Shown here: positions 41,322 to 42,174 of the stretch, piece after piece
Position numbering within the stretch: the first letter of the stretch is position 1
Layout: every line of letters starts with the position of its first letter
DNA from: Octopus bimaculoides
Lineage: Eukaryota
Direction of reading: 5' to 3'
Length of the DNA stretch: 55,308 nucleotides
NCBI RefSeq assembly: GCF_001194135.2
Contig: NC_068993.1
Span: 15,683,900-15,739,207 of the forward strand
The notes under the pieces: model-generated
Told to the model about the DNA's origin: nothing
Seen by the model: the letters and a program-made list of their open reading frames with translations, nothing else
Database searches by the model: none
Made by a program: the position numbers and the translations under genes

Positions 41322-41502
41322 TTTTTTTTTTATTTGCCACCAGGGTGACAGATGAAAAGGAGAATATAAAAGAAAGTATGCACGGCATACAATAAACAAA
41401 GGGAAGTATACATACAGTTCTATATTTAAGAGATGAGGAATTATTTACATTATTTACATTATTTACATTTGACGGATATTTCTCCTCATCTTGTTTGTTG
41501 TT

Positions 41503-41548
41503 AACACAACGTTTCGGCTGATATACCCTCCAGCCTTCGTCAGGTGTC
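41503..41548 (-). ncRNA. Minimal type I hammerhead ribozyme motif (left arm)
   Basis: Exact reverse complement of 41846-41891. Confidence 0.8.
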
Positions 41549-41634
41549 TTGGGGAAATTTCGAACCTGGGTTCTCATTCCTAACGATGTTACTATTATTA
41601 TTTATTATTATTATTACTATTATTAATCAGGTCG

Positions 41635-41694
41635 CTGCCGTAAATCGAACTCGGAACCTTGGGGTTAGTTGCCCGCGCCCTTAACCACTACGGG
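41635..41694 (-). promoter_or_regulatory. tRNA-like Pol III internal promoter, left arm
   Basis: Minus strand CCCGTAGTGGTTAAG...GAGTTCGATTTAC: A and B boxes, each slightly degenerate. Confidence 0.55.
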
Positions 41695-41698
41695 CATA

Positions 41699-41760
41699 TG
41701 GCGTAGTGGTTAAGAGCGTGGGCTACTAACCCCAAGGTTCCGAGTTCGATTCACGGTAGC
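41699..41760 (+). promoter_or_regulatory. tRNA-like Pol III internal promoter, right arm
   Basis: A box TGGCGTAGTGG (41699-41709), B box GAGTTCGATTC (41742-41752). Confidence 0.7.
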
Positions 41761-41845
41761 GACCTGATTAATAATAGTAATAATAATAATAAATAATAAT
41801 AGTAACATCGTTAGGAATGAGAACCCAGGTTCGAAATTTCCCCAA

Positions 41846-41891
41846 GACACCTGACGAAGGCTGGAGGGTATATCAGCCGAAACGTTGTGTT
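41846..41891 (+). ncRNA. Minimal type I hammerhead ribozyme motif (right arm)
   Basis: Stem I GACAC/GTGTT, core CTGACGA plus an extra A, stem II GGCTG-10nt-CAGCC, GAAA, palindromic stem III ACGT, cleavage triplet GTT (41884-41886). Confidence 0.8.
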
Positions 41892-42174
41892 AACAACAAA
41901 CAAGATGAGGAGAAATATCCGTCAAATGTAAATAATGTAAATAATGTGAAGTATACATAGTATACAATCAAAAAGAATGATAGTGATGTAGTACACATGA
42001 TTCAGAATGATCTCTAGCGATAATCCAGGAGCCCCATTGTCCCAGATGCTCATGAACATCAAGGGAAAGTGTGCTCTTCAATTCCTTTGCTCAGACACAC
42101 AGGTGTATACTTCGAGCGGTACCATCCGCTCTTGCCATTTTTGCAACTTTCACCCGCATTTCAATAAAATCACT

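What the first reader, a model, noticed from the sequence alone, without database searches (positions are those of the whole stretch)
41403..41959. Palindromic twin element: two divergent tRNA heads, two hammerheads, inserted as one unit
Seen: 248/247-bp inverted arms around CATATG. Each arm is a tRNA-like head with A and B boxes, then an (AAT) spacer, a hammerhead motif and a terminal stem-loop region. The left arm has 32 extra terminal bases. A perfect 12-bp direct repeat (GAAGTATACATA) flanks the whole 533 bp, so the palindrome was integrated in a single event. Neither arm has a T4 terminator before the ribozyme. Established: Penelope-like elements carry minimal hammerheads in partly inverted pseudo-LTRs, and Schistosoma SM-alpha is a tRNA-related repeat with a hammerhead. 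Inference: a Pol III-driven, ribozyme-processed non-autonomous retroelement mobilised by a Penelope-type RT/GIY-YIG protein. I do not know of the head-to-head, single-TSD form being described, but I cannot search the literature, and it may correspond to an already named octopus repeat.
Basis: partly seen in the sequence, partly recalled or inferred. Interest (0 to 1): 0.9.

Follow-up and report, generated by a model that had tools for sequence, protein, structure and literature searches.

The report
Twin insertion of a hammerhead-bearing octopus SINE
A 533-bp head-to-head pair of short tRNA-headed retroelement copies, each carrying a minimal hammerhead ribozyme motif, was inserted in one event; its shape is the known signature of Penelope-like retrotransposon machinery, so it is a clean example of that signature and not a new kind of element.

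Summary
Inverted arms of 249 nt (98% complementary) lie inside a perfect 12-bp target-site duplication enclosing 533 bp, and the left arm has 32 extra terminal bases.

Related copies show that the element's 5' end is GGGCATATGGCG. The right arm is therefore element nt 1-256 and the left arm nt 12-288. CATATG belongs to the right arm's 5' end and is not a symmetry centre. Each arm holds element sequence that the other lacks, so two separate reverse transcriptions are needed.

The hammerhead is missed by Rfam, but it fits the Penelope-type minimal hammerhead feature by feature. Helices I and II and the tail stem covary across homologues.

Three features match published Penelope-like element (PLE) insertion behaviour:
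- the head-to-head twin form (16 of 16 ORF-detected cases, and five further sequenced loci);
- two discrete 3' ends 32 nt apart;
- head-to-tail arrays in relatives.

The same hammerhead type lies between tandem RT+GIY-YIG ORFs in metagenome contigs.

Several points are not shown. No autonomous octopus partner was found. Pol III transcription and self-cleavage are untested, and cleavage would in fact separate the promoter from the tail. The twin form is already described for PLEs. A tRNA-like head on a PLE-type tail is the modestly new part.

The parts
41403..41414 (.). Left copy of the 12-bp target-site duplication GAAGTATACATA
   Evidence: Perfect direct repeat with 41948-41959.
41415..41691 (-). 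Left arm: element nt 288 to 12 on the minus strand. It is 5'-truncated by 11 nt and ends at the distal 3' terminus ...TATAGAACTG.
   Evidence: The same terminus is seen in the window fragment at 21145 and in L001 and L003.
41415..41446 (-). 32-nt tail extension present only on the left arm (element nt 257-288). It contains the 3' strand of the tail stem (41431-41440).
   Evidence: It matches the optional 30-40 bp PLE tail between two RT start sites (PMC8557442, PMC11167929).
41503..41548 (-). Left-arm minimal hammerhead (mirror of 41846-41891). The predicted cleavage site is between 41508 and 41507 on the minus strand.
   Evidence: Descriptor scan. Identical in sequence to the right-arm copy.
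41692..41947 (+). Right arm: element nt 1-256. The 5' end is full-length (GGGCATATGGCG...). The 3' end is at the proximal (internal) terminus ...AAATAATGT.
   Evidence: The 5' end is confirmed by L003. The proximal terminus recurs in L003, L005 and L077.
41692..41767 (+). tRNA-like head with A box 41699-41709 and B box 41742-41752
   Evidence: Rfam tRNA 21.6 bits, below the gathering score of 29. ARAGORN negative. The boxes were read directly from the sequence.
41768..41805 (+). (AAT)n-like internal spacer between the head and the hammerhead module. The mirror copy is at about 41589-41626.
   Evidence: A variable A/T-rich spacer occupies the same place in L003 and L077.
41846..41891 (+). Minimal type I hammerhead. 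Helix I is 41846-50 paired with 41887-91. The core CUGACGA is 41851-57, followed by an extra A at 41858. Helix II is 41859-64 paired with 41873-78. GAAA is 41879-82, and C15.2-G16.2 is 41883-84. U16.1 is 41885 and U17 is 41886. The predicted cleavage site is 41886|41887.
   Evidence: chance expectation; fold; covariation. The features match PMC4209133.
41903..41912 (+). 5' strand of the tail stem (AGATGAGGAG). On the right arm its partner is missing, because this arm starts inside the loop.
   Evidence: a G-C to A-U compensatory change in relatives.
41948..41959 (.). Right copy of the target-site duplication
21145..21229 (-). Separate tail-only copy of the same family (element nt about 200-288). 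It has the distal terminus and a 9-bp TSD (CAATAAAGT on the plus strand).
   Evidence: blastn 88.5% identity, nhmmer E = 3e-12, flanks.

Best explanation
The 533 bp are the product of one integration event of a 288-nt non-autonomous retroelement. From 5' to 3' the element has a tRNA-like head, an (AAT)n spacer, a short segment with a second B-box-like GGTTCGA, a Penelope-type minimal hammerhead, and a stem-loop tail.

The proposed mechanism is as follows. A Penelope-like element's RT/GIY-YIG protein, supplied in trans, made a 12-bp staggered cut. It then used both 3' ends to prime reverse transcription of two template RNAs. The cDNA primed at the left nick started at the distal start site (nt 288) and stopped 11 nt short of the RNA 5' end. 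The cDNA primed at the right nick started at the internal start site, in the loop of the tail stem-loop (nt 256), and reached nt 1. Joining the two cDNA ends head to head and filling in gave the near-palindrome flanked by a single TSD.

The hammerhead is part of the module taken from, or shared with, PLE pseudo-LTRs. As a monomer it is probably inactive and is not needed for this insertion.

Shown: the anatomy, the unique sequence in each arm, the two recurrent termini, the recurrence of twins, the conserved RNA structures, and the presence of the same hammerhead class in real PLEs.

Inferred: the PLE enzyme as the mobiliser, priming on both strands, and Pol III transcription from the head.
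For: 1. The geometry and TSD are confirmed.

2. Each arm has element sequence the other lacks. The right arm alone has nt 1-11, which L003 confirms as the element's 5' end. The left arm alone has nt 257-288. Neither arm can therefore be a copy of the other.

3. The hammerhead has every trait listed for PLE minimal hammerheads in PMC4209133: CUGANGA and GAAA cores, an unpaired nucleotide between A9 and G10.1, a G10.1-C11.1 pair, a 5-bp helix I, a 6-bp helix II, no helix III, and a palindromic C15.2-G16.2. The chance expectation is 0.03 or fewer per window.

4. Across 12 homologous modules from 8 loci, 83% of cells pair, against 32-48% when the partners are slid. Four pairs change on both sides: helix II U-A to C-G and G.U to U-A, helix I C-G to U-A, and tail stem G-C to A-U.

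5. Two discrete 3' termini about 32 nt apart recur. The proximal terminus is seen in the window right arm, the L003 sense arm, L005, L077, the L006 antisense arm and the L009 antisense arm. The distal terminus is seen in the window left arm, the window fragment, L001, the L003 antisense arm, the end of the L006/L008 arrays and the L009 sense arm. This matches the two RT start sites and the optional tail of PMC11167929.

6. Head-to-head twins recur. They are present in L001, L003, L077, L006 and L009, and L009 also has a 12-bp TSD. Of the 108 ORF products compared (the 107 found with the module's sense peptide plus one cluster member), 16 contain both an antisense and a sense module. All 16 are head to head and none is tail to tail.

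7. Relatives form head-to-tail arrays: 129-bp units in 2.8 copies in L006, and units joined by C(n)A(n) filler in L008.

8. The same hammerhead pattern lies between tandem 815-892-aa ORFs carrying RVT_1 and GIY-YIG domains in L026.

9. Published work states that PLE protein cleaves and extends both strands (PMC11167929), and that PLE insertions often carry an inverted 5'-truncated copy and a one-sided 30-40 bp tail (PMC8557442).
Against: No autonomous PLE sharing the tail (nt 196-288) was found. The window has no RT ORF. The 107 library hits to the module peptide are all 238 aa or shorter. No octopus genome could be searched at the DNA level.

The locus comes from a gapped assembly, which I take to be short-read, and it could not be checked against reads: two exact-ORF look-ups found nothing.

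The five differences between the arms all lie in the head, and the model does not explain this clustering.

The comparative sample was gathered through ORFs that cross the module, so the frequencies are not unbiased.

Pol III transcription and ribozyme activity are untested.
Confidence: 0.7

Rival explanations
1. The partner is an ordinary LINE, not a PLE. The twin arose by L1-style twin priming, and the hammerhead-like motif is a passenger.
For: The partner was not identified. Octopus genomes hold many active LINE families (RTE, CR1, Dong-R4, L1-Tx1; PMC13282606). A stem-loop tail is also typical of LINE/SINE pairs that require a specific 3' tail (own knowledge). The only RT gene near a relative (L006) is a LINE, judged from its apurinic-endonuclease-type motifs.
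Against: Twin priming on one RNA gives adjoining segments, not fully overlapping ones (own knowledge), whereas here 245 nt are present in both arms. Two fixed 3' termini 32 nt apart, a one-sided tail, head-to-tail arrays with filler, and a minimal hammerhead with PLE-specific traits together are described only for PLEs (PMC8557442, PMC11167929, PMC4209133). The LINE in L006 lies 4.4 kb away and is unrelated to the array.
Confidence: 0.12
2. One cDNA snapped back on itself (hairpin second-strand synthesis), or a single inserted copy was later duplicated in inverted orientation at the DNA level.
For: The arms are 98% complementary, and the junction contains the palindrome CATATG.
Against: Each arm carries element sequence absent from the other (nt 1-11 on the right, nt 257-288 on the left). 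A copy of either arm could not contain it. In L003 and L009 the two arms are truncated at very different points and are separated by filler. The single TSD flanks both arms.
Confidence: 0.05
3. Assembly artefact: a single SINE insertion was mis-assembled into a palindrome in a gapped assembly, presumably built from short reads.
For: The window has 14 runs of N. PLE-type structures are known to trouble short-read assemblies (PMC8557442). The odd clustering of arm differences in the head could come from k-mers of paralogous copies.
Against: Both outer junctions are to unique flanks and carry a perfect 12-bp TSD. The right junction (truncated tail joined to TSD) cannot be produced from a single minus-strand copy. 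The same architecture is seen in contigs assembled independently from different sequencing runs (L001/L002 and L003/L004) and in a long-contig (352 kb) assembly (L006).
Confidence: 0.06
4. Two independent insertions: a second copy landed by chance exactly at the 5' end of the first.
For: SINEs are abundant in octopus genomes (11.6% of the O. vulgaris genome; PMC13282606), and nested insertions occur.
Against: There is no second TSD. One 12-bp duplication flanks the whole unit. Head-to-head outnumbers tail-to-tail 16 to 0 (even allowing roughly three-fold frame bias this is far from 1:1). The same arrangement appears in five other loci.
Confidence: 0.03
5. A foldback or MITE-type DNA transposon with long terminal inverted repeats.
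For: Long inverted repeats flanked by a direct repeat.
Against: The arms are unequal and correspond to a polar element with a defined 5' head and 3' tail. A tail-only copy with its own TSD exists (21145-21229). TSD length varies (9, 9, 12 and 12 bp). Monomeric and tandem forms of the arm exist.
Confidence: 0.02

Closest known systems
Insertion architecture of Penelope-like elements (Craig et al. 2021, PMC8557442; Frangieh et al. 2024, PMC11167929)
   Same: An inverted, 5'-truncated copy abuts the 5' end of the main copy. A 30-40 bp tail sits at only one end (32 nt here). Two alternative reverse-transcription start sites are used. Both DNA strands are used as primers. Relatives form head-to-tail partial tandems.
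   Different: There is no RT/GIY-YIG ORF, so this element is non-autonomous. The inverted copy is almost full length (missing 11 nt), which makes the unit nearly a perfect palindrome. The 5' end is a tRNA-like head and not a pseudo-LTR.
Minimal type I hammerheads of PLE pseudo-LTRs (Cervera and de la Pena 2014, PMC4209133; Lunse et al. 2017, as cited in PMC6765202)
   Same: The conserved cores are present, with an extra nucleotide between A9 and G10.1, a G10.1-C11.1 pair, a short helix I, a long helix II, no helix III and a palindromic 15.2-16.2. That paper also reports dual motifs on opposite strands 100-700 bp apart.
   Different: The motif sits in a dispersed non-autonomous element behind a tRNA-like head, not in the pseudo-LTR of a coding PLE. 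Activity has not been tested.
Schistosoma Sm-alpha / Sj-alpha SINE-like elements (Ferbeyre et al. 1998; Laha et al. 2000; summarised in PMC6765202)
   Same: A Pol III-type promoter region is combined with a hammerhead in a short non-autonomous retroposon.
   Different: From my own knowledge, the Sm-alpha hammerhead is a canonical type I with a helix III and loop-loop contacts, and it is active. Those elements are usually in tandem, with the promoter 3' of the cleavage site in the processed monomers. No sequence homology was tested.
Metazoan non-LTR retrozymes (Cervera and de la Pena 2020, PMC7229834; Li et al. 2026 preprint, 10.64898/2026.07.22.740005)
   Same: They are short non-autonomous elements with type I hammerheads, thought to depend on PLEs and related to PLE pseudo-LTRs. 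Relatives of this module (L006, L008) form about 129-bp tandem units.
   Different: Retrozymes are defined by tandem repeats of about 170-400 bp with canonical hammerheads and by circular RNA. The window copy is not tandem, has a minimal hammerhead and carries a tRNA-like head.
Cephalopod tRNA-derived SINEs (Ohshima and Okada 1994 octopus OK/OR families; Ceph-SINEs, Akasaki et al. 2010, discussed in PMC5786205)
   Same: A tRNA-derived head and a cephalopod host.
   Different: The Ceph-domain strings quoted in PMC5786205 (CCTTGGGAAAG and CCTCCAGCTATGGGTTAAATAGT) are absent here, and Ceph-SINE bodies derive from RTE.

Membership tests
PLE-type minimal hammerhead (PMC4209133) | Conserved cores CUGANGA and GAAA, with H17 not G | tested here: met
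   CUGACGA is at 41851-57, GAAA at 41879-82, and U17 at 41886.
PLE-type minimal hammerhead (PMC4209133) | Unpaired nucleotide between A9 and G10.1, and a G10.1-C11.1 pair | tested here: met
   The extra A is at 41858. G41859 pairs with C41878. Both are kept in all intact homologues.
PLE-type minimal hammerhead (PMC4209133) | Helix I of 4-5 bp and a long helix II, supported by covariation | tested here: met
   Helix I is 5 bp and helix II is 6 bp. Compensatory changes occur in both helices. Only the inner 3 bp of helix I are kept outside the octopus group.
PLE-type minimal hammerhead (PMC4209133) | No helix III or loop 3, with palindromic positions 15.2-16.2 (dimer-dependent) | tested here: met
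   A15.1-C-G-U16.1 has no loop, and ACGU is self-complementary.
PLE-type minimal hammerhead (PMC4209133) | Self-cleavage (as a dimer or with protein) | not testable with these tools
   This needs in vitro transcription and cleavage assays.
Rfam hammerhead families (RF00163, RF00008, RF02275-7) | Score at or above the gathering threshold | tested here: not met
   There is no hit even at E <= 10. The same is true for the hammerhead of a bona fide RT+GIY-YIG PLE, so these models do not cover this class.
PLE-mobilised insertion (PMC8557442, PMC11167929) | An inverted 5'-truncated copy adjacent to the 5' end | tested here: met
   The left arm is nt 12-288 and abuts nt 1 of the right arm. The arrangement recurs in L001, L003, L077, L006 and L009, and in 16 of 16 ORF-detected cases.
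PLE-mobilised insertion (PMC8557442, PMC11167929) | An optional 30-40 bp tail at one end, from two RT start sites | tested here: met
   There is a 32-nt extension on the left arm only. Both termini recur in independent loci.
PLE-mobilised insertion (PMC8557442, PMC11167929) | An autonomous element with RT and GIY-YIG that shares the 3' module | tested here: inconclusive
   None is in the window, and none is among the 107 peptide hits. The hammerhead class is present in the RT+GIY-YIG PLE L026, but that element's tail is not homologous. No octopus DNA collection was available.
PLE-mobilised insertion (PMC8557442, PMC11167929) | Head-to-tail partial tandems (pseudo-LTR) | tested here: not met
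   They are not present at this locus. They are present in homologous modules in L006 and L008.
tRNA-derived SINE | Internal Pol III A and B boxes in a tRNA-like 5' region | tested here: met
   In the right arm the A box matches 11 of 11 and the B box 9 of 11, against the consensus as I recall it. The left arm lacks the first 4 nt of the A box.
tRNA-derived SINE | Recognisable tRNA cloverleaf | tested here: inconclusive
   Rfam tRNA scores 21.6 bits against a gathering score of 29, E = 0.069, for the right arm only. ARAGORN is negative. The acceptor stem pairs poorly when read directly.
tRNA-derived SINE | Short, multi-copy, flanked by TSDs, and non-coding | tested here: met
   The unit is 288 nt. 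Family members occur in the window fragment, L001, L003, L005, L077 and O. bimaculoides proteins P0001 and P0025. TSDs are 9-12 bp.
tRNA-derived SINE | Transcription by RNA polymerase III | not testable with these tools
   This needs RNA 5'-end mapping, POLR3 ChIP or inhibitor tests.
Metazoan non-LTR retrozyme (PMC7229834) | Tandem repeats of about 170-400 bp, each with a canonical type I hammerhead, expressed as circular RNA | tested here: not met
   The window copy is an inverted pair and not tandem, and the hammerhead is minimal. Circular RNA cannot be tested here.

The most novel reading that the evidence does not exclude
This family may be a true Pol III tRNA-derived SINE that uses Penelope-like elements as its partner. 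As far as I recall, that pairing is absent from current SINE classifications.

Its twin insertions would be the direct footprint of a dimeric PLE particle carrying two template RNAs. The RNAs would be held together by intermolecular pairing of the helix-III-less hammerheads. This would give the minimal hammerhead a structural role in pairing templates, not a cutting role.

A by-product would be ready-made perfect hairpins of about 250 bp, scattered through a cephalopod genome and able to form long double-stranded RNA when transcribed through.
Probability: 0.12. Interest if true: 0.75.

Novelty: new variant of a known kind. Interest (0 to 1): 0.45.

Why it matters
Thousands of minimal hammerheads lie dispersed in animal genomes, and only a few map to coding Penelope-like elements (PMC4209133, PMC7761336). 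This locus shows one kind of carrier: a short element with a tRNA-like head that behaves at integration exactly like a PLE.

Because both arms are almost full length, a single insertion displays both reverse-transcription start sites and priming from both DNA strands. These are the features recently shown in vitro for a lizard PLE (PMC11167929). The locus therefore gives in vivo, cross-phylum support for that model.

It also gives a simple genomic read-out for testing the model genome-wide: twin copies, a bimodal distribution of 3' ends, and TSD length. And it raises a testable question, namely why a hammerhead is kept where cleavage would separate the promoter from the tail.

Tried and rejected
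- Rfam at gathering and at E <= 10 gave no hammerhead. I do not count this as evidence against the motif, because the same models miss the hammerhead of a real PLE.
- ARAGORN found no tRNA.
- A second hammerhead-like match at 10196-10256 lacks the G10.1-C11.1 pair, has a wobble-rich helix II and has a competing perfect hairpin. I judged it likely chance.
- The search for homologous proteins with the module peptide gave only one hit. Its contig was not on record.
- Exact look-ups of two window ORFs, meant to find independent assemblies of this locus, found nothing.
- P0025, an O. bimaculoides chromosome gene, returned no DNA.
- The 800-aa RT gene near the L006 array is, by its motifs, a LINE with an apurinic-type endonuclease and is unrelated to the array.
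- RNAcofold of two hammerheads only gave a trivial full duplex and was not informative.
- Ceph-SINE identity was rejected because the quoted Ceph-domain strings are absent.
- Snap-back synthesis and DNA-level inverted duplication were rejected because each arm has unique element sequence.
- The ORF through the module (MRTQVRN...) is not taken as coding. All of its homologues are short, and the reading frame simply follows the conserved RNA motif.
- Pfam did not recognise the two ORFs that looked transposase-like to me.
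Full report
**1. Observation**

The region reads as described. The repeat finder gives inverted arms 41444-41692 and 41702-41950, 249 nt each, 98% complementary, 9 nt apart. A perfect 12-bp direct repeat GAAGTATACATA sits at 41403-41414 and 41948-41959 and encloses 533 bp, 41415-41947. 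The left arm continues 32 nt beyond the point where the right arm stops (41415-41446). Neither arm has TTTT in the sense orientation. The first TTTT lies 44 nt downstream of the left arm and 191 nt downstream of the right arm. The window has 14 runs of N, but the finding lies inside an uninterrupted stretch, 36888-42993.

**2. The parts**

- *tRNA-like head.* Rfam's tRNA model scores 21.6 bits at 41697-41758(+), below the gathering score of 29, with E = 0.069. ARAGORN finds nothing. The A box TGGCGTAGTGG (41699-41709) fits the consensus, as I recall it, at 11 of 11 positions. The B box GAGTTCGATTC (41742-41752) fits at 9 of 11. This is a degenerate tRNA-derived head, as is usual in SINEs.
- *Hammerhead.* Rfam finds no hammerhead even at E <= 10. 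A structural descriptor that I wrote does find the motif once per arm. The descriptor requires CUGANGA, zero or one extra base, a helix II closing directly on GAAA, a short segment, then U and H, and a helix I. In simulated sequence of the same dinucleotide make-up, such a match is expected 0.03 times per window, or 0.007 times with both helices at least 5 bp.
- *Layout of the motif on the right arm.* Helix I is GACAC/GUGUU, at 41846-50 and 41887-91. The core CUGACGA is followed by an unpaired A at 41858. Helix II is GGCUGG/UCAGCC. Then come GAAA and A15.1-C-G-U16.1 with no loop. U17 is at 41886, so the predicted cleavage site is 41886|41887.
- *Match to the published class.* This is, point by point, the minimal hammerhead that Cervera and de la Pena described in Penelope-like elements. 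[quoted passage not shown] Rfam's models also miss the hammerhead of a bona fide PLE, so the Rfam negative carries no weight.
- *Tail.* The tail folds into a 10-bp stem, AGAUGAGGAG/UUCCUCAUCU, around a loop of (AAAUAAUGU) repeats.

**3. Other copies**

Within the window there is one further piece: a tail-only copy at 21145-21229(-). It is 88.5% identical, ends at the same ...TATAGAACTG terminus and has its own 9-bp TSD.

No eukaryotic DNA collection was available. I therefore used the open frame that happens to run through the module (55 aa, window:41413-41577:-) as a probe.

- The representative protein library returned 107 short ORF products and no long protein.
- P0001 and P0025 are from Octopus bimaculoides, so the family lives in that genus.
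- Fetching the contigs behind some products gave octopus-type copies 79-82% identical to the window: L001/L002, L003/L004, L005 and L077, all from Logan runs SRR118693xx.
- It also gave more distant homologues of the hammerhead-plus-tail module: L006-L008 (ENA ERZ21867824) and L009 (JGI 3300023443) (similarity).
- I could not identify the host organisms of these last contigs.

**4. What the copies show**

(a) *The 5' end.* In L003 the sense copy starts GGGCATATGGCG, identical to 41692-41703. L003 and L077 also have the same order of head, A/T-rich spacer and module. The right arm is therefore element nt 1-256 and the left arm nt 12-288. CATATG is simply part of the element's 5' end. The left head has lost the first four bases of its A box.

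(b) *Two reverse transcriptions.* Each arm contains element sequence that the other lacks: nt 1-11 on the right and nt 257-288 on the left. Neither arm can be a copy of the other. This excludes snap-back synthesis and later DNA-level inverted duplication, and it requires two reverse transcriptions from RNA.

(c) *Two discrete 3' ends, 32 nt apart.* The proximal end lies inside the loop of the tail stem-loop. It is used by the window right arm, the L003 sense arm, L005, both arms of L077, the antisense arm of L006 and the antisense arm of L009. The distal end lies about 16 nt past the stem. It is used by the window left arm, the window fragment, both arms of L001, the L003 antisense arm, the last unit of the L006 and L008 arrays and the L009 sense arm.

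(d) *Recurrent twins.* L001, L003, L077, L006 and L009 are all twins. L003 has a 9-bp TSD and L009 a 12-bp TSD around the whole unit. Among the 108 ORF products compared (the 107 hits plus one cluster member), 16 contain both an antisense and a sense module. All 16 are head to head and none is tail to tail. Stop codons in the antisense tail bias this test by perhaps three-fold, which does not explain 16 to 0.

(e) *Tandem arrays.* Relatives form head-to-tail arrays: 129-bp units in 2.8 copies in L006, and units joined by C(n)A(n) filler in L008, where only the last unit carries the tail extension.

**5. Conservation of RNA structure**

I aligned 12 modules from 8 loci and tested the hammerhead helices and the tail stem on that alignment.

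- 83% of cells are paired, against 32-48% when the 3' partners are slid by 1-3 columns.
- Four pairs change on both sides, in 11 cells. At most 2 of 500 shuffles reach the observed percentage paired, both-sided cell count or covariation score. The counts of pairs and of pair types do not stand out.
- The compensatory changes are helix II position 4 (U-A to C-G), helix II position 6 (G.U, A-U or U-A), helix I position 3 (C-G to U-A), and the tail stem (G-C to A-U).

There are three caveats. The structure was drawn from one of the sequences. The sequences are related. Several copies are decayed.

**6. Link to Penelope-like elements**

A scan of metagenome contigs for CCTGANGAAGG-N12-24-CCGAAACGTTGT gave 67 loci. 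In L026, L034 and L039 the motif lies between tandem ORFs of 815-892 aa. [quoted passage not shown] That is a canonical endonuclease-positive PLE. Apart from the hammerhead itself, these PLEs are not homologous to the octopus tail.

The literature supplies the rest:
- A purified PLE protein cleaves and extends both DNA strands and starts reverse transcription at two adjacent internal sites. The interval between those sites is the optional tail (PMC11167929).
- Dual minimal hammerheads 100-700 bp apart on opposite strands were noted in Schistosoma (PMC4209133).

The shape of this locus is thus what PLE machinery is known to produce.

**7. Mechanism proposed**

A PLE protein acting in trans made a 12-bp staggered cut. 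Each 3' end primed reverse transcription of an element RNA, one from the distal site and one from the proximal site. The two cDNAs were joined head to head, one complete at its 5' end and one 11 nt short.

The mobilising enzyme, the both-strand priming and Pol III transcription of the source copy are inferences.

'Ribozyme processing' is not supported. This hammerhead class is inactive as a monomer (PMC4209133), and cleavage was dispensable for PLE insertion in vitro (PMC11167929). Here cleavage would separate the promoter-bearing head from the tail. The tail-only fragment at 21145 begins 4-8 nt past the predicted cleavage site. That would fit retroposition of a cleavage product, but it is a single case and ordinary 5' truncation explains it equally well.

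**8. Unexplained**

All five differences between the arms lie in the head (nt 24, 28, 33, 61, 66). None lies in the remaining 190 or so compared positions, which has P about 6e-4 if differences were spread uniformly. At three of these sites the right arm keeps the tRNA-like state. Possible causes are two different template RNAs, reverse-transcription errors on a structured head, or assembly effects.

Every homologue also has a GGTTCGA box directly 5' of helix I. In L007, 16 of 17 nt there match the T arm of the window's head. The module may therefore itself descend from a tRNA-derived element.

**9. Comparison and novelty**

The twin, single-TSD form is already described for PLEs. Minimal hammerheads dispersed outside coding PLEs are known. 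Short non-autonomous PLE derivatives are known: retrozymes (PMC7229834 and the 2026 preprint), MRC1 in Chlamydomonas (PMC8557442), and short non-autonomous Penelope elements in butterflies (PMC6685494). A Pol III-type promoter combined with a hammerhead is known from Sm-alpha (PMC6765202).

I did not find in the searchable literature a tRNA-headed SINE with a PLE-type minimal hammerhead and tail. From my own memory, no SINE class with a PLE partner is listed in the usual classifications. The family may nevertheless already have a name in Repbase or Dfam, which I could not check. It is not a Ceph-SINE.

I rate it a new variant of a known kind, of moderate interest.

Noticed in passing
window 10196-10256 (+): A second match to my relaxed hammerhead descriptor: CTGAAGA ... 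GAAA TCTGCAGT T A, with a 6-bp helix I. It lacks the G10.1-C11.1 pair, its helix II relies on two G.U pairs, and a perfect alternative hairpin (TCAGTG/CACTGA) competes with it. Rfam is silent. It is probably chance, although only 0.03 matches per window are expected.
   Followed up: partly
window 42176-42395, with copies at 5565-5767, 10661-10885, 20615-20832, 24724-24943, 35660-35882 and 52734-53176: A different repeat family of about 220 bp is present in at least eight copies (72-84% identical). One copy lies about 230 bp to the right of the twin. It is likely another octopus SINE and was not characterised.
   Followed up: no
window 1323-1598, 2506-2843, 15716-16098, 16639-16836, 26441-26565: Another repeat family of 125-340 bp at 84-88% identity, in both orientations.
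   Followed up: no
window 9023-9256, 31427-31753, 37167-37622, 50213-50609: A further repeat family (74-85% identical) that ends in TA/CA microsatellites. Several assembly gaps (runs of N) are flanked by such microsatellites.
   Followed up: no
window 19422-20306 and L006 18975-19809: A stretch of the window containing a 173-aa ORF (19928-20449) is 69-78% identical to part of an ENA metagenome-assembly contig (ERZ21867824) that also carries the hammerhead module. To my eye the ORF looks like a mariner-type transposase, but Pfam gave no hit.
   Followed up: partly
L006 10066-10516, L008 10150-10560, L009 2559-2798: Distant homologues of the hammerhead-plus-tail module, from hosts I could not identify, show the full PLE repertoire: an inverted 5'-truncated copy, about 129-bp head-to-tail units, C(n)A(n) filler between units, a tail extension only on the last unit, and a 12-bp TSD in L009.
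   Followed up: yes
window 41828-41837, L007 10423-10439: A GGTTCGA (B-box-like) box sits just 5' of hammerhead helix I in every homologue. In L007 the sequence AAGGTTCCCGAGTTCGA matches the T arm of the window's tRNA head at 16 of 17 positions. This hints that the module itself descends from a tRNA-derived element.
   Followed up: partly
window 41262-41331: An (AAT)n microsatellite followed by a T run lies about 75 bp left of the insertion site. PLEs are reported to favour microsatellites and AT-rich targets, but this insertion is not inside the repeat.
   Followed up: no
L010-L076 (metagenome contigs): Sixty-seven contigs, many from what I recall to be termite-gut metagenome projects, carry the same hammerhead pattern. 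This presumably reflects host PLE DNA in those samples. Only L026, L034 and L039 keep long RT ORFs, with GIY-YIG confirmed by Pfam in L026 only.
   Followed up: partly
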